A DNA stretch of 64,000 bases from Octopus bimaculoides (GCF_001194135.2 NC_069002.1:1591065-1655064); one strand, 5' to 3'; counted from the first letter of the stretch, positions 6,060-60,382 are shown. Translations and numbers: made by a program. Notes: generated by a model not told the origin, from the sequence alone.

Positions 6060-6350
6060 TCTCCGCTAGTACTATAACCTAGAGCCGACCAAAGCCTTGT
6101 GATTGGATTTGGTAGACGGAAACTGAAAGAAGCCCGTCGTGGTGTGTATGTATGGACTCGTGTGTCTGTGCTTGTCTCCACCATCGCTTGACAACAGATG
6201 TTGGTGCGTTTACGTCTCGTTACTTAGCGGTTCGACCTAAGAGACCGATAGAATAAGTACTAGGCTTACAAACAATAAGCCCTGGGATCGATTTGTTCTA
6301 ATAAAGGTGGTGCTCCAGCATGGCCGCAGTCGAATGACTGAAACAAAAGG
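6060..6350 (+). mobile_element. SINE family B (central microsatellite type)
   Basis: ggatttggtagacggaaactgaaagaagcccgtcg..ccaccatcgcttgacaac..gagaccgatagaataagtactagg..ggtgctccagcatggccgcagtc. Related copies at about 24040-24460, 28240-28720, 35060-35560, 39575-39960, 48670-48960, 63290-63380 and 63840-63990. Confidence 0.75.
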
Positions 6351-27021: not shown

Positions 27022-31052
<4,031 letters not shown>

Positions 31053-31730
31053 ATAACGGCCCTTTTCTCTTCTTTTGCGCCATGGGTCCTTCGCCATCTA
31101 GGATGTATGTCTGCCCTTACTTTTTAGAGCATAAGGAGTGATTAGACTGACTCCCTCCAAATATTTACTTTATCAACTATGGAAGGATGAAAGGCAAAAT
31201 GGATTTGGATAGGATTCTTATATAATACATGATTAATTCAAAACAATGTGGATAAGCAAGCATTACATTTTAACAGGGTTATCTAAATGTTAAAGGAACA
31301 AAGAACCCACTGGTCATACCCATTCCCCTCTAAGTTACTGGTTTTGTGCCTAATTAGAAACAATTGTTTTTGTTGCTATATTCTAAGATTAATCTGATTT
31401 CTGCCTTTTTCTTTCAGAATGGAAGCTAAACTACGCAAAGCCAAAGAGGTGAGTTTATGACAGTTTCCTTTCTCAGAGTCATTGGGTTGTTGGAATATTT
31501 CCTGAATTCTGAATATATATGTATATAGTTTGATATGGTTTATTTTTGTATTTTCAGGGTGCTGAATGATTAGAGATTGATCAGTATTGAACTTTATGGG
31601 AAGAAGATGGAGAAGAAATGTGGGAAAGAAAAGGGGATTACCTGTTTTAAAAAAAACATTTTGGACACTGTTAAATATTGGAGCAAGCCTGAGGAATGTT
31701 ATGTATGTGTGTGTGTATCCATACATATAC

Positions 31731-31806
<76 letters not shown>

Positions 31807-32824
31807 GTATATATATATAGTCACACACACACACACACATAATCAATAGCGATTTGCTCTACGTCATCATCCTGAGGTACATGTACCCAAGAGATGTTTG
31901 GTACTTGCTTGTGAAACTTTCAACCAGAATCCAGTGCAAGCCAAACTAAACACGATCTAACCCAACCGAATACAGCACCGAACAACTGCCCCACCAACAT
32001 CTCAAAATAACAAAGATAAACAATATCCCAAGGGAAACATACATGCATACACACACATATATATATATATACATGTTTATATATATATATATATATATAT
32101 GTACAGGTGTGTGTGTGTGTATGTATATGTTTATGTTTGTATACATGTGTGCAGAAGACTGTTGTTTCTAGAGTCGTTGCCATTCCCTGCTGATAATCTT
32201 CCTTCATTCAAGTCACAAAAATACGGTAAAAATATATCAAAATTAAGAAGAAAAAAAATCCACTAAAACAGGCATCTCAATGTTTGGTAAATACAAACAC
32301 TCATATACATTACATATGTATACATACATCTATATATGTACATACACATTCATATATAATATGTATATATAAATACGCACACACGTATATATATATATAT
32401 ATATATATACACACTTAATATACATGTGTAGATGTGCATACACATGTAATTACTTTAAAAATTTTTTAATTGTAAATATTTTCACCATTCCTTCCTTTTT
32501 TTTAATTGTTTCTTTTTGTCCTATTTTTTTGCCAATAAATTTTTTGGCCGTGGAATATTGTTCTGCTTTTGTTTTTCTCAATGCAACAATTTTTGTTATT
32601 TTCATCATTAATATTGATTAAGGCAGCAAGCTTAACCACACTGCTAAGCTTTGGTCAAAATGATAAAAAAAGAAAAAAATTACAAAATGGTATCAAAAAG
32701 CAAAATAAAAAAGATTAAAGTTTATTTTTTAATAATTTATTTAATTATTAATTATTAATTTTATTAATCAACCAATTACTTCTCTTCAACGACCAGTACA
32801 TCTCAACATTTTAATAGTAGGTGA

Positions 32825-33059
32825 CTATCTTCTTGTTGTGACGTAGGGTGGTGGGCGCCGGAAAGGAGCTGAATTTGGATTCTCTGGGAAGTTCATTCCA
32901 ACATGGAGAGTATTATTAAGTGATGTTATTATGCGGATAGCCATGTAATGCAGGAACTCTTCCTTAGTGTAATTAAGGCCTTCAGGTGACATGACATTTT
33001 GGAGGGATTCTGCTTCTTTCTGATATTGTATAAGGATGGCACTGGCCTCTGACTCAGCT
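32825..33059 (-). CDS. Duplicated distal last exon of the SPFH gene (candidate alternative terminal exon)
   Basis: Intact acceptor (ttgttgttcttcag|agctgag) in the same phase 2 as exon 35767-35992. Open 77-codon frame AESEASAILIQYQKEAESLQNVMSPEGLNYTKEEFLHYMAIRII..., 51/62 aa identical to the proximal copy, with its own stop and a downstream AATAAA (minus) at 32722-32727. Confidence 0.65.
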
Positions 33060-33699
33060 CTGAAGAACAACAAAAGGAAGGATATTGGTGAGAATTTGAT
33101 GGTGGTGGGCAAGGCAGTATTAGTAATAGCAAAGCGGTGGTAGTAGTGATGATTGTGGTGGTGGTGATGGTAGTAGTTGTAGTAACAGATAAAAGAAGTG
33201 GTTGTAACAGATGTAGTCAAGGTAGTTGTGAGAATGAAGACTGGACACACATATCTATGTGTATAAAATGTGTGCATGTATGTCTTCCCGTTCTGATATT
33301 GCTAGATTGTAGTAAACGAGCATCCCTGTCATACAAGCAGTGCCATTCGTTTCCAAAGTTCTGCAAAAACTTGTCTAGCCATGGAGGGGAATATATCACC
33401 TTGCTTGAAAACAGGTGAGGGTTGATGACATGAAAGGCATCCAGCCATAGAAAATCTGCTTTACGAAAACCCATCCATCCATGCAAACATAGAGAAGCTG
33501 GCATAAAGATGATGATGGTAATCTTCACTACTTCTGGCAGAATTTCTTTGAGATCTCTCACAGAAACTAAGGTTCAAAAGGAACTCTGATTGGGAAACAC
33601 TCTCCTTATTTCTACTCTAGGCACAAGGCCTTGAAAATTTTGGGGGGAAGGGGGCCAGTCGCTTACATTAACCCCAGCATGTAACTGGTACTTATTTCA

Positions 33700-34527
33700 T
33701 GATTCCTTTGTTATTGCTTGGTTTGGGTTTAAAAGGTCAGAGTAGACTAAACCTTTCATATCCCACCAAACAAATAACAACACCTTACATGGGTGAAGAC
33801 CTTCTTTAGCCTGGGGTGCTGGTGTTTCTCCTTTCTCTACCCACTGTCTTCACTGCTTGACATTTTTATAGAGAACTCACTTCTCGTCACCAGTCATTAT
33901 TCGGTCAAAAAATGGTTCATTTGTGAGACATGACAGCAAAGAAGAGCACATATTCACTCTCTGTGCGCGATTAGATTTGGAAAGTTTGTGAAGAACCCAT
34001 TGTCCCAGTTTGCTGACTTTTCTGATGGTACCTAAGAGTCGATGAATGGTTAAATGATTGAATCCAAGCTTCTCTGCTAGTTCCTTAACATTTATGGTGG
34101 GATTTTGTTTCACCAGGGTTTGCAGGGCATCTTTGTTGAGCTCTACAGACCTTCCAGGACAAGGCTCATCTTCTAGGCTGTAGTTTTTGGCTCGGAATTT
34201 CTGGAGCCACCATTGACGCTGGCTTACTCTTGTCTGATCCCCATTTACTGCATTAATATTCCTCACACTTTCCATTGCGCTGTTGCTTTTATTGAATTCA
34301 TAAAACAAAATATGCCAAATATATTCCTTAGTCACTTCCATTAAAATTTTGAAAAAATAACTGTTAAAATCAAACTGCACTCTTCAAAACTTGCACTAAG
34401 AATAATTACAAGGCAAAATTACTACCTGTTTTTATAGCAAGTTGATGCATGCAGTTTCACCTGTACCCCTCTGACTTTTAGTTCATGCAATTGAAAAAAA
34501 CCACATTGTTAATGGGATGATCCAGTA
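33700..34527 (-). mobile_element. Truncated, dead Tc1/mariner (mariner) transposon: 5' TIR plus N-terminal half of transposase
   Basis: Minus strand reads TA + tactggatcatcccattaacaatgtgg (TIR-like end). ORF MEVTKEYIWHILFYEFNK..GRSVEL..QWVLHKLS..RIMTGDEK-stop (normally W), then VLYKNVK..GLHPCKVLLFVWWDMKG. Cut by a SINE near 33700. Confidence 0.9.
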
Positions 34528-35655
34528 TAGATATATATATATATATATATATATAGCACTTGACCTTTTATATGGCTTCTAAATATCTGGAATTTCTAGA
34601 AATCTGGAAATATCATGCAATTCCATGCAAATATACTGTATCTTGTATTTAGTAAAAAAAAAATTGTTTTTGAAGTGGATTGATAGAGATTAAAGATTGT
34701 CTATTTTTGAATTACATTAATTTGTGCCTGCATCAGTCAACTAAAATCATGCTCTTTATTTTTCTTCATTCAATTTTCACTCATTAACCATTCTGCTATT
34801 TGCATGGAAAAGTGTGTTATATATTTTACAAAATTTTAAGTGAATTAATTATATCAAACAGTTTCTGCTTTAAAAAAACGTATTAATTTCAATCTGTTAA
34901 ATACAACTTTTCAAAATTTTTTATTTTCCATAATTTATTTTGTATTCTAGGTATGTACTTAGACTGTCCTCTGACAACCAGAAAATCCAAATATCTGGGA
35001 TACCTCTAGTCCCAGGCTTCCTGGATTGTTTGCCTGGTACTGTACATGCACATGCGCGCACGCACGCACACACACACACACATGCATGACGGGTTTCTTT
35101 CAGTTTCCATTTACCAAAGACACTCACATGGATTTGGTTGTCCTGAGACTATAGAAGACTCTTCCCCCAAGGTGCCACACAGCAGGATTGAATATTCAGC
35201 CATGAGTTTGCAAAGCAAGTTTCTTACCACAAGGCCATGTTAGCACCTATAAGCGTATATTCACAAATACAAACCCATGGCAGCATTAAAACCAGATGTT
35301 GCTGTTGTTAATGATGATGTCGATGGTGATGACAGCAACGATGACAATGATGGTGATGATGAAACGCACATGCATATATATAAATGCACACAAAAACATA
35401 TTATGCACATACATATACTGGGTTTCCTGCAGTTTCTATTTACCAAATTCTCTCAAGTTATTGGTTGTCCTGGGGGGGGGGGTCAAAGAAGACATTAGCC
35501 CAAAGTGCCATGCAGTAGGACTCGCAACCACATGAGTGTGAAGCAAGACTTCTTAAGCACATGGCCAAACCTGCCCCATGATGGCAAATAAATAATTTAA
35601 AATAAAATAAAATAAAATAATGTAATCAAAAAATTTTTTAATAATTAGAGTAAAA

Positions 35656-35661
35656 TTTATT
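35656..35661 (-). terminator. Probable poly(A) signal after proximal SPFH last exon
   Basis: AATAAA on minus ~105 nt after stop 35767. The region is AT-rich, so a chance match is possible. Confidence 0.35.
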
Positions 35662-35766
35662 TAATTTCTTATAAATTTCATGGTAATTAATAGTTTAATT
35701 AACTAACCAATTATTTCTCCTCTACAACCAGTATGCCTCAATATTTTAATCATAAGAGACTATTTT

Positions 35767-37757
35767 TTATTGTATTGGAGGTGGTAGGACCCTAAACGGA
35801 ATCAAATTTGGATTTTCTGGCAGATTCATTCCAACATGGAGAGGACTGTTAAGTGATGAGATTATGCGGATAGCCATATATTGCAGGAACCCTTCGTTAG
35901 TGTAATTAAGGCCTTCAGATGACAAGACATTTTGGAGAGATTCTGCTTCTTTCTGATATTGTATAATGATGGCACTGGCCTCTGCCTCAGCTCTGAAGAA
36001 CAACAAAAAGAAGGATATTGATCAGAATTTGATGGTGGTGGTGGTGGTGCTGCTGCTGAAAGTCATATTAGTATTAGTACCAGCGGGGAAGGTAAGGTTG
36101 TGTCAGTGATTGTGGAGGTGGCAGTGGTGAAATCAGTAGTAGTAGTAGCAGTAGTAATAAACAACAACAACAACAGCAATGAGTGATGATGGCAACAATG
36201 ACAATAAAGATAATGATGACAACAAAATGATAATAAAAATGATGATGACGATGACGACAATAACAAAGATGATGATGATGTTGACAGCAACAATAAAGAT
36301 GATGATGACAAAGATGTTGACAACAACAATGACGACGATAAAGCTAACAAAGATGATGACTGCTGACGATGAAGATGACTACAATAATGAAAGTGCTGAT
36401 TATAGTGACATTGGTGATGACGATGACAAGAGTAATAACAATGACGAAGATGATGATGACAGTGATGGGACACGACAGTAATGTTAGTAGTAGTAGTAGT
36501 AGTAACAGTAATAGCTGCAGGAGCAGCAGTTGTTTTGTGTGAAGCTCTTACTGTTTCTTCTTGATTCTTGCCCTCGACCTGGCTTTCTCCAAAGTGATAT
36601 TAGAAACGGCTATTGCTTCTTTCATTTTTGTTTCCGCTTCAATCAACTGTTTCGGTCGTTCTTGTTTGGCCACCTGGAATAACAGAGAGAAATGAGGAGG
36701 AGCAAGTCGCAATCCAAGTATAAAGATAGGCTTAACAAGTTCACTTCCCAGCCATGCAGGGTCCAGGTGCGATTCCACTGTGAAGCACAAACGAGTCAAG
36801 TTCCTGTGTATAAACATGTATATATATGTGTGTGTGTGTATATATATAATAATAAGCAATTATTAACTTTCCAATCTCCATTTTCTTTTTCTTCTTTTAT
36901 ATGAATATAAACTATGTTTTTATATATACACCTATTATTTTAAGGAAATTAATTATTATTATTTACAGGATTGTAAAACACGGCGCCGTATATAAAAAAA
37001 ACCATTAGCACCAAAAATATTCACATGAAAAACAGTGGAATTTCATTTACCAATATATCTTCTCTCGCTCTTTCTTTCTCCCGAATGGCTTTTTCATATG
37101 GTTTAGGACGTCTGATGTTGTTGACCTGGAATGAGAGGAGGGGAAAATATTGATTCTCTTATTTGTTTCAGTCATTTGACTGTGGCCATACTGGGGCACC
37201 ACCNNNNNNNNNNNNNNNNNNNNNNNNNNNNNNNNNNNNNNNNNNNNNNNNNNNNNNNNNNNNNNNNNNNNNNNNNNNNNNNNNNNNNNNNNNNNNNNNN
37301 NNNNNNNNNNNNNNNNNNNNNNNNNNNNNNNNNNNNNNNNNNNNNNNNNNNNNNNNNNNNNNNNNNNNNNNNNNNNNNNNNNNNNNNNNNNNNNNNNNNN
37401 NNNNNNNNNNNNNNNNNNNNNNNNNNNNNNNNNNNNNNNNNNNNNNNNNNNNNNNNNNNNNNNNNNNNNNNNNNNNNNNNNNNNNNNNNNNNNNNNNNNN
37501 NNNNNNNNNNNNNNNNNNNNNNNNNNNNNNNNNNNNNNNNNNNNNNNNNNNNNNNNNNNNNNNNNNNNNNNNNNNNNNNNNNNNNNNNNNNNNNNNNNNN
37601 NNNNNNNNNNNNNNNNNNNNNNNNNNNNNNNNNNNNNNNNNNNNNNNNNNNNNNNNNNNNNNNNNNNNNNNNTATATATATATATATATGGATCATGAAA
37701 CGAATGGTTTACACCTGGTAGCTTCTCATATATTCCATCTTCTGTCTTTCATTTGCC

Positions 37758-37814
<57 letters not shown>

Positions 37815-38436
37815 ATCACTCCAAAGAAGTCAACTGATGAACTAAGTAATTAAAACACATGGAAACTTAATTGCAATCAGTTTAGTTTTAAATGATAGAA
37901 ATTAATTAATTATAAGCAGCACCATCACAGCTGCTACGCTGTCACCACTGCCAGTACCAACACCTAGACCATTGCTATAGTAACACCACCACAACCACCA
38001 GCACCACCACCAACATCAATGCCACTGCTACCATCACATGACTATTACCGTTGCTAGTATCACTACGTCCCCTTAAGATTATTATCACCAAAACAACCAC
38101 CACCATCACCACCATTATCACTAACATCATCACCACCACTACCACCACAACCTACTACAATTACCACTAAAACTGCAACTACAATTACCACTAAAACTGC
38201 AACTACAACTACTACTACTACTACCAGCACCACTCCTACTGCTACTTGTACATTGCTTACCTGCATACTGTAGCACCCTTTTCAATCCTTCGAAGTCCTT
38301 AAACTCTTTGATGACTTTCTTCATTGAATGAAGCTGGATTTTGAATTGGCAGGAAACATCCAAAATAATACGAACTCCATTCTGGTTCAGACACTGAGAG
38401 AAGAGGCACAGACGAAAAGAAAATACAGTAAATGTT

Positions 38437-38600: not shown

Positions 38601-40086
38601 AAAGAATATATAGATATGTATAAGAATATATATTTATAAAAGAATACACACACACACACACACACACACATATATTTTGGACCATCAAGCCCCCAGAAAC
38701 ATGGCAGGTATATTCCCGCCTGGACGGGACGCCGGAAAGAATGAGATTAAGAAGAGAGAGCGAGAGAGGGAATGAGTGAGAAGGAGAGTGAGAGGGAAAG
38801 ATAGAAAGAAAGAGAGAGAGAGAAGTGAGACAGTGGGTAGTGTTTCTATGTAGAAATAAAATAAGGAACTTACCATTATGCCATTGAAGGTCTTGGTTTG
38901 GTAAACATTAGGGAATATGATAAAACTGAAACCAGGGGGTCCAAGATGAAGTCCTTCAAACTTTGGATTGTCATGGAGTTTTTTGGTAATTTTGTTGTAG
39001 ATGAGACCAACTAGACAAGAAAAAGACATATAATTACAATTTTAAGACCAAATTCTTAGTAAGTAGGAAGACAGACAAATCACAAACCCCTTCAGGTAAA
39101 TGACCGTGCTCAATTTGTAGAAAAGGCGTAGGTAGAAACTCCATAAGATGCACCCAGTGTAAGCTTTGGACACATAAAAGGTGCAACAATATCAGAGGAA
39201 GGTTAACAGGGAAATTAGCTTTTGTGTGTGGAAACACAGGTACAATAAATGCTGAAAATGTGTAGAAAATAGACTTCGTCAACTACCAGCGTGGCAAGCT
39301 AGAAGTAGCAGATAGCTTCCGTTATCTAGGTGACCAAGTTGAGTATGAGTGCATGTGTATGTGTGTGTGAGTGAAGGAGAGAAGGGGAGATCATTGTATA
39401 TCAGTAAAAAAAAGAAAAAATCCACTCTTTGTAAACGAAGTCCTTTGTGATATTTGTTCTGCATAGTTTTACAGACACTCCCTTATTACTCTTACTGTCA
39501 GAAACAGTTGGGCAGTTGGATTCCTGTAGCTAATGACGATATATATCTTTCATCTTTCACTTTTTATCTTTTACTTGTTTCAATCAATAGACTGTGGCCA
39601 TGCTGGGGCACCGCCTTGAGGAATTTTAGTCGAATGAATCGACCCCGGTATTTATTGTCCTTTCTAAGCCTGGTACTTATTCTATCAGTTTCTTTTGCTG
39701 AACCTGTAGGTTACGGGGATGTAAACACACCAACACCGGTTTTCAAGTGGTGGTAGGGGACAAATATAAAGACACACGCACACACTCACATACAGACACA
39801 TACACACACACACACACACAGACAGACGCGCGCGCGCGCAAGCACACACACATATATGGAGCTAAGGTAGAAGACGCTTGTCCAAAGTGTCACGCAACGC
39901 AACGGAACCCAGAACCGTGTGGTTGAGAAACATACTTCTTGGCACACTGCCGCGCCCATAATTACAAATGTGCTCTGAATTACCTTCATATGTCTGCAAT
40001 TTCTTCATGGAAGTGGCCAAAAGTGTTGCGATTATGGCCACCGCCATTACCGCACCAATACACAGCGCTATTGCTTTTGGAGACAT
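35767..40086 (-). CDS. SPFH/Band-7 (prohibitin-homology) domain membrane protein, isoform using proximal last exon; one internal exon missing in gap
   Basis: Exons (minus): 39984-40086 (MSPKAIALCIGAVMAVAIIATLLATS, hydrophobic anchor), 38874-39010 (GLIYNKITKKLH..GLHLGPPGFSFIIFP), 38261-38393 (CLNQNGVRIILDVSCQF), [missing, needs phase 1 to 0], 37051-37125 (VNNIRRPKPYEKAIREKERAREDIL), 36552-36673 (VAKQERPKQLIEAE), 35767-35992 (AEAEASAII..stop). The layout of N-terminal TM, Band-7 core and Ala/Glu-rich coiled coil is typical of SPFH proteins. Confidence 0.8.
39575..39960 (-). mobile_element. SINE family B copy in SPFH intron
   Basis: gactgtggccatgctggggcaccgcc..cttattctatc..acggggatgtaaacacaccaacacc in reverse orientation. 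Confidence 0.72.
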
Positions 40087-52635: not shown

Positions 52636-55600
52636 ATGATGAGTTCCTCAGCAATGGCAGAAAGTTTCACCCTGCCCGTCAACGTTGACCAGCTGACCTG
52701 TGTTGTGGACTCAATGGTCGAGGTTTCATCTGATGCTGGTTCTGCTGCACCTCCTTTACCAAATGTGAACCATCTGGCTTCCAGCCCGGCTCTGTCGACC
52801 GTTGCAGACGTCATGGCTTGCGGCAACACTGCTGCTGATAACCAAACTGTCACAGACACTTGTCTACCTCATATTCTACAGACACAGGCTTCTGGCTGTA
52901 AGTTGGTGTTGTCGTTGAATCATCTATGTCACCACCACCACCACCACAGCACTATATACTATACACTATACTACAACTGCTACTACCATATTAACACCAT
53001 GATACAACCACACACCACTACTACAGCTGCTGCTACAGGCTCAGCCTCCATGACCACCACAATCACCACCACCACCACCACTATTACCACTACAATGCCA
53101 CATGCAAATACCACCCCACCACCACTGAGACACCCACAAACACCACCACACATGCACACACTACTACTGCACCCATACCACCACCATTACCATCACACTA
53201 TACACTATTGCTACATCACCACAAAACTACCACTACCTCCACCTCCCTACCACAAAAGCTTTTATAGTTGCTCTGTCACCAACTAGCGTCTGACCGTTGA
53301 CCATTCTTCTACTTGCAGTGTTATCCAGCACAAACAATGTTCCGTCTCTTCACATCCCTGTGTCCCTAACAGGACACTCCATCTCCATGTTGCCACTGAT
53401 GCTCTCCCTAAACCTACCTCATCGACCCCTTATCTCTGCCATCGACAAAGGTTCAATCAGCAGGGCTTCCATCCATACAGGTGACTACTTGCCTTTTGTT
53501 TTTTTGCTCCATTTTATTAGTCTAGGCCAGCAGTTCTCAGCTGGGGTCCATATGACCGTTAGGGATCAATATGGCCCTTAGGGGTCAATATAATCCTGAG
53601 GGAGTCCATATGGCCCCAGAGGGTCAACATGAGATTTTGTTAAAATTTATCTGTAATAAATTGCTTACATTTCTACTATACAGAATATTTTAATTTTTTC
53701 AATACAATTAATTATAATTATGATTATAAAGATAATTATAAAAAATAATTTTTAAAATAATTATGATCATAAAAATAATTATAGTTATAAAAATAATTTT
53801 TAATTATAATTATAAAAATTGCGTTTTATGAGAAGCATAAATATAAACAAACATGCACACACACACACACACACACACATCTTTATAGATAAGCTTTATA
53901 TTCTGTTATATAAATGTGCATTGTCTATATTTTCAGCTCCTACACCAATCCCGTTTCCATCAGTAATGGCGCCTGGCATCCAGAGGGAAGCTGGGAGTTG
54001 TTCCACTGTTCAAGACTTAAACATGCTCAATTGCATTCAGGCAGAGTCCTGTGACAACCATCAGCATCATAACAACAACAACAACACCACCACCACCACC
54101 ATAGAAACTCTGGAATCTTACCCATCACCCGCCACTGGTCCCCAACCAATGGAAGAAGCCAGCTGTGACCCAAACCATGTTAACAGACTCATCACCACAA
54201 ACATGCACAGCACTCTGCAGAATCCAGTGCTCGTCACTTCCAACCTGTCCAATCTCTCCGACCTTCGTCTCGGGATGGGAATCACCTCACAGAACGATAA
54301 CTTCCCCACTCATTCCCCTTCCATGCCTGATGTACAGTTGCCTCCGCTTTTGCAGGCTGCTAACCAATTTAGTCAAAAACATGTAGAACACCAGAAATCC
54401 GGTGCTGCCATGAGTGCAGCACCTTGCATCATGCAACATAATGGTTCAGCCCTTGAACTAACAAATGGTTCCGCTGCAGAAATTGCAGCGTCCATATCCG
54501 GTGCCAACCTTCAATCAATCTTAGATGCTTCACTTCATCAGCAACACCAACAACTCCAGGAACACTGTAATGATGAAGTAGCCAATTCTTTGAATTCTAT
54601 TGGAATGGTTACCAACAAGTCATGTGACGGAAATGCTGCAGCTTCTCTTTTAGACATCAACAACATGTCAGGTATTCGAAACTTGTCTTCTACAGTTTTT
54701 GTTCTATTTTCGTTTTTGTTGTTTTTTTTCTTTAAAGTCTGGGATTTATTCTATCAATCTTATTTGCTAAACTGCTGAGTCATGGGGAAGCAAACAAGGG
54801 GGGACTGGTGGTCAGATACACAGACACACACATGCACACAGATATACACACAAACACACACACATACGTACATACACACACTGAAATACACAGTCATTCA
54901 CACAAAGATACACACGCACACTCACAAACACACACACACAGACAGACATAAAGACATCCCCGACACACACACACACATAGACATACACACACACACACAC
55001 ACACACATATGATGTGCTTCCACACAGTTTCTGTCTACCAAATCCATTCCAAGGCTTTGGTCAGTCCAACCAAAATTCTCAGCCAAAGAAAGCTAGGTTG
55101 ACTTTCTAGACCCAGACGACAATGGTGGGGCAAAATTCCATTTGAAATGCAGTAGGATTTGTGATGACAATGACCAATGTCTGAATGTTTACTCCACATG
55201 TTACGTTATATATTTTGACCTTTCACTTCATTGTATTTTGACCTTTCACTTCATTGTATTTTGACCTTTCTCTCCATTGTATTTTGACCTCCATTGTGAG
55301 GTGAGGAGTTGGCAGAACTGTTTGTATGATGGTTGAAATGCTTAGTGGTATTGCATCTGTCTTCGTGTTCTGAGTTCAAATCCCACTGAGGTTGCTTTTG
55401 CCTTTCAGCCTTTCGGGGTTGATAAAATAAGTACCAGTTGGTTACTGGGGTCAATATAATTGACTTAGCCCTACCCCCACCGAAATTGCTGGCCTTGTGC
55501 CAAAACTTGAAATTGACGAATGGATGGAGTTTGCTTCCCACCACCACCAACCACCACCACCGCCATAAACCCCTACTTCATTCCTGCAGTCCTTTCTAAC

Positions 55601-58600
55601 AGATCAATATCATTTCTCCATTCCAGTGATCGACATGATTCTCAAAGTGCATCAAAGTGGTGCAGCAGCAGCAACTACCACAACAACAACTGATGCTGCT
55701 AAAGATGAGACCAGGAGTGCAATGGTGATGTCTGGTACCAGCTGTCAACTGGGGGAGGACATGGCTACATTTAGTACTAAACCTTACAACCAAATGTCTT
55801 TTGACAACTGTAAGCAAACTTTTTAGGTTAAACCTTAATATTTTTCCTTGTTCTTGTTTATTTAGCCCAAGGCCTGTCTTGATTGAGAAGTCTTAAAATG
55901 ATCAAAGGCATTCCAGCCAAGCTGTTATTTCTAGCATGTTAAGTGACAATGTAGAAGCCCTCTTCTTGGCTGGTGTATTTTGTTGGTTTATGGCTGGCTT
56001 ATATGATGTTGGGGATAATTTTGGTGATGCTAATGAGTATGATGGTTATGATGATGATGATGATGAAGATGAGGATAAAAATGACGATGATGATGATGAT
56101 TATGATGTGTCACTGGTTTTAAGTATTACTTAAAGTAGCCCGTTTCTGTTCCTCTCTTTTCCAGTTTGCCTAGAATGCAACTACAACAGCAACACCAGTA
56201 GCAATGGCAGCAGCAGCAGCAGCAAGGCTCCATGTCAGATCCACAACACAAATTACTGTGATATTCCCGATAACCCTATCCCTTCTCGAGCTCGTCTCTC
56301 AACACCTTCGCTTCTTTACCTGAAAACTACCTCAGCTCATGGTTACACAGACACTCTGGGTTAGTTGTTTCCCATTTGCTCACTCCCTCCTCCCCATCAG
56401 CTCTTCTTTAAGTTAATCTGTTACTCTGTTAATCTGTTAATCTGTTACATTGTGTACCATTAGCAGAGTGGACTCTCTTGCAAGAAATCAGGCCAAATCT
56501 CCGCTTTGAGAATAATTTCCTACCTCCCCCCCATCTTGGTTGGCCAGAGAAAAAATGATAGGCTCTGCCTTCCCACCTGACAGAAAAATACTGTATGTAT
56601 CCTGAGAGTGAGTGTCTTGGAGTCGAGGGACAACCAGCGATCACTGATTAATCTCCCAAAAATCAGGGTTTTAATAATTGCTCATACCTGAATTCTCAGA
56701 ACCGTATTCTGTGAAAGATTTCTCTTTGACAAAAGTTTAGAATTCAAATATAGGCAGTAATTTTAACCAATGGGACACTAATAATTATGCCTATTCGGCC
56801 AACATGACCATTACGTCATATTACCGCCATTTACGACTTGCTTGCTACATTATTATTATTATTATTATTATTATTGTTCTGTTCTTTTGTAGGAGTGTGG
56901 GCAAAAGAAACCGTTCCTTGCCGAAGCCGGTTTGGTCCATTCGTTGCCAAAGTGAAGGGGAAATGTCCAGTGGATTCACAAAAGACATCAGATTTCCCCA
57001 TTTGGATGGTAAGTATATTGTATCTCTGGATCTAGCATTCTCCATCACATCCTGCAACACTCCACAACCTATTGAGGTACATTTTTACATCTTCATTTAA
57101 GGCAGCAAGCTGGCGGAATTATCGGAGTGCCGGACAAAATGTTTAATGGCATTTCGTCTGTCGTCACATTCTCCCGTCTTAATTACATATTTCATATTTT
57201 AACATTGTATGAGTTAATTCCCTTGGATTATTGTGTTGGATAGAGTTCACTCCCTTAATGCGTTCGCTCTGTCTTTCTCTCCCCCTCTCTCTCTCTGGGC
57301 TGATTGGCACTCTGGAGATGATGTTATCGTCTTGTCCCCTTTCCTGAAATTGCTGGCCTTGTGCCAATATATGAAACCCATATTTTATACTTTCTCTCTT
57401 TCAGATGTTCTTAGTCAATCATTTTAAACTAACTCCAATTAGTTCTTAATTATCAGTCTACATGGAACCATGCCTCATTAACCATTCTCCAACCTCTTTC
57501 ATTCTTTTATTGCAGATCTTCTCCAAAGATGGACAAACTGCTGATGTCCTTGATGTCAACGATGAGAATGAGTGCAACTGGATGATGTTTGTGAAACCAG
57601 CTCGGTCATCAGAGGAGCAGAACTTGGTAGCGTACCAACAACAACATAGTATTTACTTCATGACATGCTGTGATGTTCAACCACACCAAGAACTCTTGGT
57701 TTGGTACTCCAACGATTATGCGAGTGCGTTGGGTAAGGCTGACGGTTTTATTATGTTTTGCTCCAGGTTGTCCTTTGTAGGCTTGTTTCTTCTTTCACTA
57801 CAAACACATGCATTCAACCCTTAACCCTTTTTATTATTATTATTATTATTATTACCTTTGCTCAGCTTCTAACGCTGGAAGATGTACTACGGTGTCAGCT
57901 GTTCACTACCAGTGAACTAAGGTAACACCTCTTATTTTTCGAGCACCTTCCGGAGTATTCGAGCGGTCCCAAGCAGTGCTGTTGTCTGCAAGTGTTCCAC
58001 CCTTATTGCAGCCCCTATTTGTTCCACGTATTTCTCAAAATTTTTACTCACTGTTCCCAGGGCTCCGACAATTATTGGTACTACTGCTACCTTTTTCATC
58101 GACCACAACTGCTTCACTTCCCAAGCTAACCTGTCATATCTCTCGAATTTTCTTTCTTCCTTATCGCATACCTTGTTGTCAGCTGGACATGCTATATCTA
58201 TGATCCAGCATAGTTTGTTTTCTTTCTCAATGCCCGGCTTCCTATTCTCTATCGCTTGGTCGCACTGAATCATAAAATCCCATCGGATCTTTGCATTTCT
58301 ATTTCCGACGATGCCTTCAGGTTTGTGGTCGTACCAACTTTTTGCTCTGTCAAGTCCATACTTGTTGCAAAGTGTCCAATGGCTATATTGCCTGGCTATA
58401 TTGTCATGAAAAGACATCCACATATCTGATTGCATATCCGATTTGGACCACCAAGAGCTGCATATAATTTCTGACCTTTGTGGATCTTAAAATGTCTTTT
58501 ATATATATTGATTGATTGATATGTATAATGTTGTTGTTGCTATTACCCACAGGTGTGCCATTGAAGGCCAACATTACCTTGAACTGTTGCGTATGCAGAA

Positions 58601-60382
58601 AACCATTTGCCAGTCACAAACTCCTGGCGCAGCATGTCAGGTCAATGCATCCCGATGCCAGTGTTCGCCGATGGCACTGCCAATTTTGTAATAGAGGTTT
58701 TACGTCAATGACCAAGTTAAAGACTCATCTATTGACCCACATCGGTGCCAAGCCCCACTCTTGTTCCCAGTGTGGGAAGCGATTCACAGACCAAAGCAAC
58801 CTCCGTACGCACCAGTCCATTCACACAGGTAAGTACCACATGGCATGATTGAATGAATTCCTTTGCTGCATTTTCATTTCATTGACTTAGTCAACCAGGC
58901 ATGGCTGTGTGGTAAGAAGTTTGACATTGTAAAATAATATTGTTACATGGTGGCATTTTAAAATGTCAACATTTTACTCTATTAACATTATGCTATGTTG
59001 AGATTTTAACAAATTGACTGTCTAATATGTTGACAATTTAGAATTTTGACATGAGCTATGTTGACATGTCAATTTTAGTAAATGTGCATCTTATAGAAAA
59101 TAAAATAAATTCAAATCTGGAATAACTGCGAAAACAGCCTAGAAAATTAGGTAAATACCTTGAGAAGATGGGAAAAAGTTACCAGCAGGCATCTACAGAA
59201 AATTGAACACTGTACCTCTCTCAGAGAAGTACAGGGTTCAATTTTCTAGACTGTTAGATTTTCTAGGCTGTTCTCACAGCCCTCCTGTGTTCAAAATTGT
59301 CTTTATTTTCTGTAAAATACCTATCCACTTAGATGTTTCTAAGACTTTTTATTAAAAAATGGCATTGTAATATATTGAATTTAATAAGTGGTTGGCGTTA
59401 GGAAGGGCATCCAGCTGTAGAAACTCTGCCAAATTAGACTGGAGCCTGGTGTTGCCATCCGGTTTCACCAGTCCTCAGTCAAATCGTCTAACCCATGCTA
59501 GCATGGAAAGCGGACGTTAAACGATGATGATGATGATGATGATATTTTAATATATTCACAAAACACTTTTATTTAATTATTTAATTTGATGTAATTATAT
59601 TGTTTTATCTTTTGCTCCATTCAGGTGAGAGAAAATTTCCGTGCAGCGTCTGTAAGAAACAGTTTCGTCAGAAAGCTCACCTGACGTCCCACATGTTTAC
59701 TCACACAGGTGAGAAGAAGCTGCAATGCCAGTTCTGTGAGAAGATGTTCTCTCGTTCTTCTGACCTCAAACAGCATGAATACCAACACACACGCGAGAAA
59801 CTCTACAGCTGTTCGCACTGTGACAAGAGTTTCTACAAAATGCAGAACTTCAAGAAGCATCTGAAGATTCATTCTGGTGAACGGAACTTTACTTGTGTGA
59901 GGTGTCACAAGTCATTCTATACAAAGTACCACTTGAAACGGCACAGTGGCACGTGTAAGGGGAGCCGAAGTACTGCTGCTCTTGGTGTTGCTGCTGCTGG
60001 TGGTGGTGGTGGTGAGAATGATAGTGGTGTTGGTGTTGGAGGTGGGAAAGTAGCAGTGCTGCAGCAGTCTGAAAACTGTGGCCACCTCCATCTAGACACG
60101 TCTAACAACATTGATGACGGTCGAGGTGGTAATGATGAAGAAGAAGAGGATGGAAATGAGGATGAGGACGAGGATGATGATGTCATGGATAGAAATGATG
60201 AGGAAGAGGTAGAGGAGGAGGAGGAGGATGTTGAAGATGACGATGATGATAATGATGATGATGATGATGATAACGGTGGCGATGAAGATGATGATGAGGA
60301 AGAGGAAGAGGAGGACGAAGATGACGATGATGATGATGATGAGGGTGATGATTGTGAAGCACAACAAAGGACTAGGGTCTGA
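52636..60382 (+). CDS. PRDM4: PR domain zinc finger protein 4 orthologue (zinc knuckle + PR/SET + 7 zinc fingers + acidic tail), ~921 aa
   Basis: Exons 52636-52897 (acceptor at 52626), 53937-54671, 55603-55809, 56165-56359, 56893-57008, 57516-57732, 58553-58828, 59625-60382; total 2766 nt, in frame. PR domain PSRARLS..GVW..FGP..DENECNWMMFV..EEQNLVAY..ELLVWYS.DYA. Fingers SNLRTH, QKAHLTSH, DLKQH and terminal C2HC TKYHLKRHSGTCKG match vertebrate PRDM4. The start codon is the least certain part. Confidence 0.88.
55211..55290. repeat. 23-bp minisatellite, ~3.5 copies
   Basis: Unit tattttgacctttcacttcattg. Confidence 0.88.
55300..55510 (+). mobile_element. SINE family A copy in PRDM4 intron
   Basis: ggagttggcagaactg..ctgagttcaaatcccactgagg..ctggccttgtgcc. 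Confidence 0.75.
57855..58495 (-). mobile_element. 5'-truncated R4/Dong-clade non-LTR retrotransposon (restriction-like endonuclease C-terminus) in PRDM4 intron
   Basis: ORF 57932-58435: HDNIAR..HWTLCNKYGL..WYDHKPE..KIRWDFMIQCD..RKPG..CWIIDIACP..KEERK..VVPIIVGALG..LQTTALLGTARILRKVL. This is the typical RLE C-terminus of R4/Dong elements. It is followed by a short 3'UTR and (TAA)8 at 57831-57854. Confidence 0.85.
59091..59315. repeat. Nested inverted repeat (foldback) in PRDM4 intron
   Basis: Stems: 59197-59215/59229-59247 (18/19 complementary), 59128-59147/59258-59277 (18/20), 59091-59105/59301-59315 (13/15). Confidence 0.8.
59385..59545 (+). mobile_element. SINE family D (aggaagggcatccagc type) with (GAT)n tail
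   Basis: gtggttggcgttaggaagggcatccagctgtagaaactctgcc..gcatggaaagcggacgttaaacgatgatgat. Related copies at about 19250-19410, 20800-20965 and 33330-33500. Confidence 0.72.

What the first reader, a model, noticed from the sequence alone, without database searches (positions are those of the whole stretch)
32700..36060. SPFH gene has two intact, tandemly duplicated last exons: a candidate C-terminus switch
Seen: exons 35767-35992 and 32825-33059 are paralogous (51/62 aa identical, then different tails LIPFRVLPPPIQ vs SAPFRRPPPYVTTRR). Both keep the same phase-2 AG acceptor, an open frame, a stop and a downstream AATAAA. Homology extends into the upstream intron (aaggatatt..agaatttgatggtggtgg) and the 3'UTR (aaccaatta.ttctc..accagta..tcaa.attttaat). 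I found no other SPFH exons between them, and that 2.7 kb has no gap. Established: SPFH C-terminal helices drive oligomerisation into membrane cages or rings. Inference: alternative last-exon choice yields two subunit types that could co-assemble, similar to PHB1/PHB2 or erlin1/2 hetero-oligomers but from one gene. The distal tail also gains a PPPY, a canonical WW-domain/Nedd4-ligand PY motif absent from the proximal copy.
Basis: partly seen in the sequence, partly recalled or inferred. Interest (0 to 1): 0.75.

Follow-up and report, generated by a model that had tools for sequence, protein, structure and literature searches.

The report
Duplicated last exon, erlin-like octopus gene
An octopus membrane-scaffold (SPFH, erlin-like) gene really does carry two intact tandem copies of its last coding exon. 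Sister octopus species already have both annotated as alternative C-terminal isoforms, so this is a genuine but fairly ordinary case of a known way of making protein variants.

Summary
The gene is Octopus bimaculoides LOC106879019, an SPFH/Band 7 gene on the minus strand. About 445 bp is present twice at 81% identity: 49 nt of intron with the acceptor, the whole last coding exon, and about 170 nt of 3' flank. Both copies have the same splice phase, open frames, stops and AATAAA signals. No other exon is duplicated.

It is not an assembly artefact. The gap-free O. sinensis locus has orthologous proximal (A-type) and distal (B-type) copies; Argonauta hians has one. The duplication therefore predates the roughly 34-Myr bimaculoides/sinensis split.

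Alternative use is already annotated in sister species: O. sinensis isoforms X1 (distal) and X2 (proximal), and O. vulgaris models of both types. In O. bimaculoides only the proximal exon is annotated, and I could not reach its transcripts.

Both copies evolve at the same moderately relaxed rate (omega about 0.5). The B type has fixed derived changes, including a new N-N-T sequon.

The exon encodes the end of CC1, CC2 and the C-terminal tail, which is the cage-cap module of erlin-like proteins. Isoform co-assembly is plausible but untested.

The PPPY/WW idea fails. The motif is absent in sister species, and the C-terminus is probably lumenal.

Verdict: a new member of a known kind, of low to moderate interest.

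The parts
39984..40086 (-). Exon 1 (coding part): start codon and N-terminal transmembrane helix (MSPKAIALCIGAVMAVAIIATLLATSMKKLQTYE)
   Evidence: Read directly. Splice phases checked. Identical to the annotated O. bimaculoides proteins. Helix 3-31 in the AF2 model of the ortholog.
38874..39010 (-). Exon 2, start of the SPFH domain
   Evidence: AG/GT borders and phase. Pfam Band_7 match spans exons 1-3.
38261..38393 (-). Exon 3, SPFH domain, ends in phase 1
37204..37672 (.). Assembly gap (469 N) that hides exon 4, about 50 codons of the SPFH domain
   Evidence: The gap is listed. O. sinensis has exon 4 at L001:19063-19212, between the orthologs of exons 3 and 5. The collinear alignment jumps across this gap. 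All O. bimaculoides models lack these residues.
37051..37125 (-). Exon 5 (VNNIRRPKPYEKAIREKERAREDIL), end of the SPFH domain and start of the long CC1 helix
36552..36673 (-). Exon 6 (penultimate), CC1 helix. It ends in phase 2, and its donor (GT at 36551-36550) is shared by both last exons.
35599..36041 (-). Proximal copy of the duplicated block: 49 nt of intron with acceptor, exon 7A, and 3' flank
   Evidence: BLASTN 80.7% over 446 nt to the distal block. Alignment. Orthologous to O. sinensis L001:~28030-28475.
35767..35992 (-). Exon 7A coding part (A-type, ancestral-like tail ...NLIPFRVLPPPIQ*). It is used in all O. bimaculoides models.
   Evidence: The A type shares S26, G35 and P51 with the outgroups.
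35656..35661 (-). AATAAA poly(A) signal candidate for the proximal exon, 105 nt after the stop
   Evidence: The same context is conserved in O. sinensis.
32666..33108 (-). Distal copy of the duplicated block
   Evidence: Orthologous to O. sinensis L001:34430-34999 at 89%.
32825..33059 (-). Exon 7B coding part (B-type tail ...NSAPFRRPPPYVTTRR*). It is unannotated in O. bimaculoides, and its ortholog is the last exon of O. sinensis isoform X1 and of two O. vulgaris models.
32909..32917 (-). N-N-T sequon specific to the B-type exon (the A type and outgroups have N/K-S/N-P, which cannot be glycosylated)
   Evidence: Fixed in the B copies of all three Octopus species.
32843..32854 (-). PPPY in the B tail. 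It is specific to O. bimaculoides and is not a conserved motif.
   Evidence: the sister species read PPPPN.
32721..32765 (-). Cluster of three AATAAA hexamers downstream of exon 7B
   Evidence: Conserved in O. sinensis.
33704..34555 (-). Dead Mos1/mariner-type transposon in the spacer between the copies. It is not part of the gene's coding capacity.
   Evidence: Pfam HTH_48 E=4.5e-10. In-frame stops. An orthologous copy lies in O. sinensis at L001:31032-31848 with terminal inverted repeats.

Best explanation
Octopus bimaculoides LOC106879019 encodes a roughly 310-aa, single-pass, erlin-like SPFH protein. Its 3'-terminal module was tandemly duplicated in the Octopus lineage: acceptor, last coding exon, 3'UTR and poly(A) signals. 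This happened after the split from Argonauta and before the bimaculoides/sinensis-vulgaris split about 34 Myr ago. Both copies have stayed splice-competent and coding, and they function as alternative last exons.

The exon-6 donor (36552) joins one of two acceptors. Joining the proximal acceptor (35992) leads to cleavage at the proximal poly(A) site and gives isoform A. If the proximal exon is skipped or read through, the donor joins the distal acceptor (33059), polyadenylation occurs about 60-100 nt after the distal stop, and isoform B results.

The isoforms are identical through the TM helix, the SPFH core and most of CC1. They differ only in the last 75-78 residues: the end of CC1, the linker, CC2 and the C-terminal tail. 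In SPFH cages these residues build the narrow-end cap. The B type carries fixed derived changes: S26P in the linker, G35E at the start of CC2, P51T creating an N-N-T sequon, and a basic end.

Shown: the duplication, its age, its intactness and orthology, and isoform models of both kinds in two sister species. Inferred: use of the distal exon in O. bimaculoides, the poly(A)-coupled choice, lumenal topology, and any effect on assembly.
For: Anatomy.

SPFH identity: Band_7 at 29.2 bits for the window exons and 73.8 bits for the complete ortholog, residues 29-202.

Gene identity and tails of the annotated proteins. These cover O. sinensis XP_029649479.1 X1 (B-type) and XP_029649480.1 X2 (A-type), and O. 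vulgaris CAI9739148.1/CAI9739147.1 (B-type) and CAI9739149.1 (A-type).

Both copies in gap-free O. sinensis DNA, with X1 mapped onto the distal copy: L001:28077-28295 and 34559-34795. Acceptor, frame, stop and 3' flank are all intact there.

Orthology from flanks: A to proximal 86% against 77% to distal; B to distal 89% against 81% to proximal.

A single last exon in Argonauta up to the conserved NuA4 neighbour.

Equal rates in the two copies between species: dN 0.064 and 0.063, dS 0.110 and 0.139.

Only one indel in each copy, 3 nt and in frame. The estimated chance that a neutral copy stays open is about 0.07, and about 0.005 for both.

Fixed type-specific residues in three species.

Structural placement of the exon and erlin as the closest solved relative.

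Annotation method in O. vulgaris (PMC10700109).
Against: I could reach no transcript, junction-read or 3'-end data for O. bimaculoides. All three of its protein models use only the proximal exon, and the protein collection holds no run-assembly (Logan) proteins from Octopus for this gene.

Substitution-rate evidence for constraint is weak. Omega is 0.58 (A) and 0.45 (B), neither individually significant. Over the 213 nt up to the PPP run each copy differs by 7.0-7.5% between species, not significantly below the 9.7% non-coding divergence at this locus (binomial p=0.11-0.17); counted over the whole exon including the tail the figure is 8.8-8.9%.

The in-frame indels lie in a (CCA)n run, where slippage by three is expected anyway.

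The RefSeq and ENA isoform models are automatic predictions, and I could not inspect their read support.
Confidence: 0.7

Rival explanations
1. The distal copy is an unused relic in O. bimaculoides. The duplication is real, but only the proximal exon is spliced in this species, and exon 7B is intact by chance or has been silenced only recently.
For: Only A-tail models exist for O. bimaculoides. Per-copy omega is not significantly below 1. Exon divergence is close to the non-coding rate. With equal acceptors, the first one transcribed should be favoured. A neutral copy would still be open with probability about 0.07.
Against: The B exon evolves no faster than A (dN 0.063 against 0.064). It keeps its acceptor, frame, stop and poly(A) hexamers in both lineages. 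Type-specific residues are fixed across three species. The orthologous exon is the terminal exon of annotated isoforms in two sister species. The O. bimaculoides models are compromised anyway by the gap over exon 4, so a missing isoform carries little weight.
Confidence: 0.2
2. It is an assembly artefact: a falsely duplicated segment, or uncollapsed haplotypes, in a gapped draft assembly.
For: The window is a draft with 14 gaps. The newer O. bimaculoides assembly carries the same gaps, so it is not independent.
Against: The copies are 19% divergent, with different tails and different flanks. The same two copies, in the same order and with the same spacer transposon, are present in the independent, gap-free O. 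sinensis assembly. Both tails also appear in O. vulgaris proteins.
Confidence: 0.01
3. The switch exists to add or remove a cytosolic PPxY (PY) motif, so that isoform B is recognised by Nedd4-type WW-domain ubiquitin ligases.
For: The O. bimaculoides B tail contains PPPY.
Against: The B tails of O. sinensis and O. vulgaris read PPPPNVT, so there is no PPxY. Twelve of 82 full-length family members end in KDEL-like xEL, where about 0.4 would be expected by chance. The closest solved relatives are erlins, whose SPFH domain and C-terminus lie in the ER lumen (PMC12624060). A lumenal tail cannot meet cytosolic WW domains.
Confidence: 0.03
4. Gene conversion from the used proximal copy, rather than selection on B itself, keeps the distal copy intact.
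For: The 5' third of the exon and the acceptor region are the most similar parts (46/49 nt in the intron). The O. vulgaris A copy has a B-like start, AESEASAIL. Paralog dS is lower in O. sinensis (0.175) than in O. bimaculoides (0.30).
Against: Type-specific differences are fixed across three species in the 3' two-thirds of the exon. Flanks group by orthology, not by species. Conversion does not explain B-type isoform models in sister species.
Confidence: 0.05

Closest known systems
Tandem exon duplication giving mutually exclusive or alternative terminal exons (for example the Drosophila pip terminal-exon clusters and the PGRP-LC 3' variable regions; reviewed in PMC9013439)
   Same: Homologous adjacent exons arose by local tandem duplication. 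They have the same phase and acceptor. Each terminal copy brings its own stop and 3' end. One copy is used per transcript, and the isoforms differ only in a homologous segment.
   Different: There are only two copies. No competing RNA structure (docking/selector) was found. The choice is probably coupled to poly(A)-site use. Usage in O. bimaculoides itself is not yet shown.
Erlin-1/erlin-2 (ER-lumenal SPFH cage; PDB 9O9U, 9VVJ)
   Same: An N-terminal TM helix is followed by SPFH, CC1, CC2 and a C-terminal tail. The sequence match runs end to end (E=1.4e-6, residues 14-295 against 7-299), including the '...IYFGSNIP' / '...LYVGMNFP' end. The fold matches. Topology is probably lumenal. In erlin1/2 the two subunit types differ most in the C-terminal region and take alternating conformations there (PMC12624060).
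   Different: Identity is only about 20%, so this is not an erlin ortholog but a separate family, rich in mollusc members and without a name. The two subunit types would come from one gene by alternative last exons, not from two paralogous genes. No assembly data exist.
PHB1/PHB2, HflK/HflC and flotillin-1/2 hetero-oligomeric SPFH cages
   Same: The same domain plan, and the top structural matches. Heteromers alternate two related subunits whose C-terminal caps differ (PMC12624060).
   Different: These are separate genes that diverge along their whole length. They sit in different compartments, and their sequence similarity to this protein is lower than that of erlins.

Membership tests
SPFH / Band 7 superfamily (Pfam PF01145) | Significant match to the Band_7 profile above the curated gathering score | tested here: met
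   Window exons 1-3 score 29.2 bits (cut-off 23.6), profile positions 2-92 of 176. The complete O. sinensis isoforms X1 and X2 score 73.8 and 73.7 bits, positions 2-171.
SPFH / Band 7 superfamily (Pfam PF01145) | SPFH alpha/beta core followed by a long coiled-coil helix; fold similar to solved SPFH cage subunits | tested here: met
   AF2 model: strands and helices 72-176, then helices 179-260 and 269-285. The top 30 Foldseek matches are prohibitin, erlin, HflK/C and stomatin at probability 1.00. The model is only moderately confident (pLDDT 71.5).
SPFH / Band 7 superfamily (Pfam PF01145) | Assembly into large ring or cage oligomers | not testable with these tools
   This needs biochemistry or cryo-EM. 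It is inferred only from family membership.
Erlin family (erlin-1/2 orthologs) | Close sequence relationship to erlins (orthology) | tested here: not met
   The best PDB sequence match is erlin-1, but at E=1.4e-6 and about 19-21% identity. That is a distant relative, not an ortholog. I describe it as erlin-like, not as an erlin.
Erlin family (erlin-1/2 orthologs) | Type II topology with the SPFH domain and C-terminus in the ER lumen | tested here: inconclusive
   The support is indirect. Twelve of 82 full-length relatives end in KDEL-like xEL, there is a conserved N-x-S/T sequon in exon 4, and the TM helix is N-terminal. The octopus proteins themselves lack an xDEL end. No experimental topology exists.
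Tandem-duplicated alternative (mutually exclusive) terminal exons | Adjacent homologous exons within one gene that share phase and acceptor | tested here: met
   The acceptor contexts differ at 1 of 25 nt, and both are phase 2.
Tandem-duplicated alternative (mutually exclusive) terminal exons | Each copy has its own stop codon and poly(A) signal | tested here: met
   TAA with AATAAA at 35661; TAG with AATAAA at 32765, 32741 and 32726. These are conserved in O. sinensis. They are hexamer matches only, and cleavage sites were not observed.
Tandem-duplicated alternative (mutually exclusive) terminal exons | Transcripts that use one copy or the other | tested here: inconclusive
   Isoform models of both kinds exist in O. 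sinensis (X1, X2) and O. vulgaris. The O. vulgaris alternative forms come from PASA on Iso-Seq and RNA-seq. For O. bimaculoides only the proximal form is modelled. Reads could not be inspected.
Tandem-duplicated alternative (mutually exclusive) terminal exons | Both copies retained under selection across species | tested here: inconclusive
   Both copies are intact in three Octopus species, and dN is equal. Joint neutral survival is about 0.005. However, per-copy omega is 0.45-0.58 and not significantly below 1.
PY-motif (PPxY) ligands of WW-domain / Nedd4 ligases | PPxY present and conserved in orthologs | tested here: not met
   PPPY occurs only in the O. bimaculoides B tail. O. sinensis and O. 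vulgaris have PPPPN.
PY-motif (PPxY) ligands of WW-domain / Nedd4 ligases | Motif exposed to the cytosol | tested here: inconclusive
   Indirect evidence points to a lumenal C-terminus, which would exclude the motif from the cytosol. There is no direct topology test.

The most novel reading that the evidence does not exclude
One gene makes a hetero-oligomeric SPFH cage. Isoforms A and B co-assemble in the ER lumen in an alternating, erlin1/2-like arrangement. Their different linker, CC2 and tail segments (and the B-specific N-glycan at N-N-T) take the 'inward' and 'outward' cap conformations that other SPFH heteromers obtain from two paralogous genes. The A:B ratio, set by last-exon and poly(A) choice, would then tune the cage's cap or its clients by tissue.
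Probability: 0.15. Interest if true: 0.6.

Novelty: new member of a known kind. Interest (0 to 1): 0.3.

Why it matters
The immediate value is for annotation. O. bimaculoides LOC106879019 lacks the distal-exon isoform that its sister species have. All three of its protein models are also defective, because exon 4 sits in an assembly gap.

Biologically, this is a clean and datable example of a terminal-exon duplication: more than about 34 Myr old, and absent in Argonauta. It swaps exactly the cap-forming module of an SPFH cage protein. If the two isoforms co-assemble, that would show alternative splicing substituting for gene duplication in building heteromeric SPFH scaffolds. It would also give a simple system for asking what the variable cap of these cages does. 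The family itself is an unnamed, erlin-like, probably ER-lumenal SPFH group, common in molluscs and uncharacterised.

Tried and rejected
1. A protein search with the 115-aa spliced C-terminus found nothing, although the database holds exact matches. It succeeded only with a longer, word-rich query. Short queries are evidently insensitive in that tool.

2. Pfam on the C-terminal exons alone gave no family. The SPFH call needed the upstream exons.

4. Pairwise dN/dS between the two copies is 0.37-0.40, 95% interval up to 0.93-1.4. It cannot separate 'both constrained' from 'one constrained, one neutral', which predicts about 0.5. I therefore moved to orthologous comparisons.

5. My first test of each copy's pN against pooled silent sites looked significant (p about 0.002-0.003). 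It leaned on a high dS in the other exons. Against the locus's own non-coding divergence (9.7%) the signal is weak, and I report the weaker reading.

6. The newer O. bimaculoides assembly (L002) was meant as an independent check. It has identical gaps, so it is not independent.

7. The O. vulgaris locus could not be fetched.

8. A search for docking/selector-type inverted repeats found only (TA)n repeats and the mariner terminal repeats.

9. No run-assembly (Logan) proteins from Octopus exist for this gene. A third database search for B-junction transcripts was judged pointless and not run.

10. No paper mentions the gene or its accessions.

Full report
**1. What is in the sequence**

The window is a gapped draft of a cephalopod genome, with 6,394 N in 14 gaps. 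On the minus strand I reconstructed a small gene:
- exon 1, 40086-39984 (ATG and a transmembrane helix)
- exon 2, 39010-38874
- exon 3, 38393-38261
- exon 5, 37125-37051
- exon 6, 36673-36552
- a last exon

All exons have AG/GT borders and consistent phases. Exon 6 ends in phase 2, with its donor GT at 36551-36550.

Two candidate last exons follow. 7A is 35992-35767 (stop TAA) and 7B is 33059-32825 (stop TAG). Their acceptor contexts differ at 1 of 25 nt. They encode 75 and 78 residues, with 51 of the first 62 identical.

BLASTN of the region against the whole window shows one duplicated block, 36041-35599 against 33108-32666, at 80.7% over 446 nt (E=6e-113), and no third copy. The block contains:
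- 49 nt of intron, 46/49 identical
- the exon, 86% identical up to the PPP run
- about 170 nt of 3' flank, 69-75% identical

AATAAA lies at 35661 after A, and at 32765, 32741 and 32726 after B.

The different tails are homologous DNA that diverged by point changes and small indels in a (CCA)n run. tblastn with all other exons finds each only once. No gap lies between the copies.

**2. What the gene is**

Exons 1-3 match Pfam Band_7/SPFH above the curated threshold (29.2 against 23.6 bits), but only over profile positions 2-92 of 176. The rest of the domain falls in the 469-N gap at 37204-37672.

A protein search with a concatenated query identified the gene as Octopus bimaculoides LOC106879019 (UniProt A0A0L8G5V6, XP_014783908.1, XP_052831594.1). 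Its orthologs are O. sinensis LOC115223175 and an Argonauta hians gene.

The three O. bimaculoides models all lack the real exon 4. They patch the hole by skipping it, by adding intronic residues, or by reading through intron 3. The complete O. sinensis protein matches Band_7 at 73.8 bits over residues 29-202.

An exhaustive HMMER search found 454 relatives. They are typically about 300 aa, with the same TM-SPFH-helix plan and short, variable tails after a conserved '...M(N/D)xP' end.

The closest solved structures by sequence are erlin-1 and erlin-2 (E=1.4e-6). The alignment runs almost end to end, at about 20% identity. The AF2 model's best fold matches are prohibitin, erlin, HflK/C and stomatin cage subunits. 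This is an unnamed, erlin-like SPFH family, not an erlin ortholog.

**3. The duplication is real and old**

The gap-free O. sinensis locus (L001) contains all seven exon positions, including exon 4. It also has two last-exon copies:
- a proximal copy at 28077-28295, 86% identical to tail A and 74% to tail B
- a distal copy at 34559-34795, 86% identical to tail B and 79% to tail A

Each has the same acceptor, an open frame, a stop and the conserved 3' flank.

The whole region is collinear between the species, including the spacer and a dead mariner element in it. Flanking DNA groups the copies by position, not by species: A to proximal 86% against 77% to distal, and B to distal 89% against 81% to proximal.

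Argonauta hians has a single last exon. No second copy lies in the interval up to the conserved NuA4-type neighbour gene.

The duplication therefore arose after the Argonauta split and before the O. bimaculoides / O. vulgaris-sinensis split, which is dated at about 34 Mya in PMC10700109. The assembly-artefact reading is excluded. The newer O. bimaculoides assembly is not an independent witness, because it carries identical gaps.

**4. Evidence that both exons are used**

The 90% cluster of the O. sinensis protein contains:
- RefSeq isoform X1 (XP_029649479.1, 315 aa) and isoform X2 (XP_029649480.1, 312 aa)
- three O. vulgaris models (CAI9739147.1, CAI9739148.1, CAI9739149.1)

X1 and two O. vulgaris models end with the B-type tail (...MNFPENP[HY]SIPF[QR]RPPPPNVTPKK). 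X2 and one O. vulgaris model end with the A-type tail (...MNMPENPNAISFR[VA]LPPPPS[SA]). X1 maps onto the distal genomic copy.

The O. vulgaris annotation paper states that alternative splice forms were added by PASA updates from Iso-Seq and RNA-seq assemblies. Those models should therefore reflect transcripts.

I could not see reads. For O. bimaculoides itself no B-type model exists, and no run-assembly (Logan) proteins for the gene are in the collection. Use of exon 7B in this species is inferred, not shown.

**5. Evolutionary signal**

| Comparison | Codons | dS | dN | omega |
|---|---|---|---|---|
| 7A vs 7B within O. bimaculoides | 71 | 0.303 | 0.111 | 0.37 |
| 7A, bimaculoides vs sinensis | 71 | 0.110 | 0.064 | 0.58 |
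| 7B, bimaculoides vs sinensis | 71 | 0.139 | 0.063 | 0.45 |
| Other exons, bimaculoides vs sinensis | 189 | 0.218 | 0.030 | 0.14 |

- The paralog comparison has a wide interval. One constrained copy plus one neutral copy would give about the same value, so it decides nothing.
- Both copies are equally relaxed, at about twice the dN of the SPFH core. The distal copy shows no sign of faster decay.
- Against the locus's own non-coding divergence (9.7%, 0.0096 gap events per nt), the exons are only slightly more conserved: 7.0-7.5% over the 213 nt to PPP (the figures used in the binomial test), or 8.8-8.9% over the whole exon. Neither copy is significant alone (binomial p=0.11-0.17).
- Each copy has a single indel between the species, 3 nt and in frame, but it lies in a slippage-prone (CCA)n run.
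- I estimate that a neutral 235-nt copy would stay open and in frame with probability about 0.07, and both copies with about 0.005.
- The most telling pattern is qualitative. Across three species the B type carries fixed derived states: S26P, G35E, P51T, L70P and a basic C-terminal end. The A type keeps the states seen in Argonauta, two unnamed relatives and Haliotis.
- P51T converts an ancestral N-P (not glycosylatable) into an N-N-T sequon in every B copy.
- The 5' third of the exon and the acceptor region are unusually similar between paralogs, and the O. vulgaris A copy starts like B. Some gene conversion at the 5' end is therefore likely.

**6. What the alternative exon encodes, and how the switch probably works**

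The AF2 model of O. sinensis X1 has mean pLDDT 71.5 and shows:
- TM helix 3-31
- SPFH core about 72-176
- one long helix 179-260 (CC1)
- a break, then helix 269-285 (CC2)
- a low-confidence tail 286-315

The last exon starts at residue 237. It therefore supplies the end of CC1, the linker, CC2 and the C-terminal tail. The fixed A/B differences fall in the linker, the start of CC2, just after CC2, and the tail.

The erlin1/2 cryo-EM paper says the C-terminal regions are lumenal and are the most divergent parts of the two paralogs. It adds that in all heteromeric SPFH cages the alternating subunits take different C-terminal conformations, one turning outward and one reaching the centre of the cap (PMC12624060).

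It remains a hypothesis.

The acceptors are practically identical, so they probably do not set the choice. I infer the usual alternative-last-exon logic:
- Splicing to the proximal acceptor, together with cleavage at the proximal poly(A) site, gives isoform A.
- Bypass of the proximal exon gives isoform B.

I found no conserved inverted repeats of the docking/selector kind.

**7. The PPPY claim**

PPPY is present only in O. bimaculoides. Both sister species read PPPPNVT.

Twelve of 82 full-length family members end in KDEL-like xEL (KDEL, RDEL, ADEL, REEL and others), where about 0.4 would be expected by chance. Three more end in xDL (KDDL, KADL, QADL). Together with the erlin relationship and a conserved sequon in exon 4, this points to a lumenal C-terminus, out of reach of cytosolic WW domains.

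I reject the PY-motif reading. The conserved isoform-specific feature worth testing is the B-type N-N-T sequon.

**8. Comparison with what is known, and verdict**

Tandem exon duplication as a source of mutually exclusive or alternative exons is well established. This includes tandemly duplicated terminal exons, as in Drosophila pip and PGRP-LC (PMC9013439). The octopus case fits that kind.

The isoforms are already present in the automatic annotations of two sister species. No paper mentions the gene, and the O. bimaculoides annotation lacks the distal isoform.

I class it as a new member of a known kind, with interest about 0.3. The finding is real and tidy, with a modestly interesting structural angle, but it is not surprising. 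The most novel reading still open is a single-gene heteromeric SPFH cage. I put that at about 0.15 probability.

Noticed in passing
window 37204-37672 (gap); compare L001:19063-19212: Exon 4 of the SPFH gene (about 50 codons, second half of the Band_7 domain) is hidden in an assembly gap. All three public O. bimaculoides protein models are wrong here. A0A0L8G5V6 skips it, XP_014783908.1 inserts intronic 'ENQYFPLLSFQ', and XP_052831594.1 reads through intron 3 as low-complexity 'GKQCTSSSRSGAGSSSS...'.
   Followed up: yes
window 33704-34555 (ORF 33877-34380, minus strand); L001:31032-32323: A dead Mos1/mariner-type transposon (Pfam HTH_48, with in-frame stops) sits in the spacer between the two exon copies. 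The orthologous element, with recognisable terminal inverted repeats, is present in O. sinensis, so the insertion predates the roughly 34-Myr species split.
   Followed up: partly
window about 35130-35260 and 35430-35590 (minus strand): Two SINE-like repeats lie just downstream of exon 7A's 3' flank. They have dispersed relatives elsewhere in the window (for example 6088-6154 and 54985-55061). They mark the downstream edge of the duplicated block.
   Followed up: no
window 36060-36540 and 33110-33220 (minus strand): The intron before each last-exon copy carries C/A/T-rich trinucleotide low-complexity DNA (CAT/CAC/ACT runs). The duplication may therefore extend about 100 nt further upstream than BLAST reports, and replication slippage or unequal exchange in this repeat may have caused it.
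   Followed up: no
window 27022-31569 (+ strand): A convergent neighbour gene encodes a NuA4/EAF6-type protein (Pfam PF09340 in the fetched loci). Its 3' end lies only about 1.1 kb from the distal exon's poly(A) signals. Synteny with this neighbour is conserved in O. sinensis and Argonauta.
   Followed up: partly
window 57462-57824 and 58516-60382 (+ strand): A PRDM-type gene. One exon encodes a PR/SET domain (PRDM2_PR, E=5e-31). Downstream exons encode C2H2 zinc fingers followed by a long acidic low-complexity tail.
   Followed up: partly
protein family (P0001-P0150): The erlin-like SPFH family is large (454 hits) and unnamed. Twelve of 82 full-length members end in KDEL-like xEL signals, and most share a sequon in 'FNTSQFQ'. 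This looks like an uncharacterised ER-lumenal SPFH family that is common in molluscs.
   Followed up: partly
O. vulgaris CAI9739149.1 (P0164) against O. sinensis X2 (P0166): The O. vulgaris A-type exon begins 'AESEASAIL' like the B type, while O. sinensis has 'AQAEASAIL' and O. bimaculoides 'AEAEASAII'. Paralog dS is also lower in O. sinensis (0.175) than in O. bimaculoides (0.30). Both suggest occasional gene conversion over the 5' end of the exon.
   Followed up: partly
O. vulgaris CAI9739147.1 (P0165): One O. vulgaris model has a 14-residue N-terminal extension (MAFSITAFQVRTSR) ahead of the usual start, combined with the B-type tail. The gene may also have an alternative first exon or start. 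An acceptor just upstream of the ATG in the window (cag at 40104-40102) fits a 5' non-coding exon.
   Followed up: no
L003:18600-19170 (Argonauta hians): The 3' end of the single Argonauta last exon and its 3' flank lie in a local tandem repeat. Weak partial matches to the last 10-34 codons recur within 500 nt downstream, but there is no second full exon copy.
   Followed up: no
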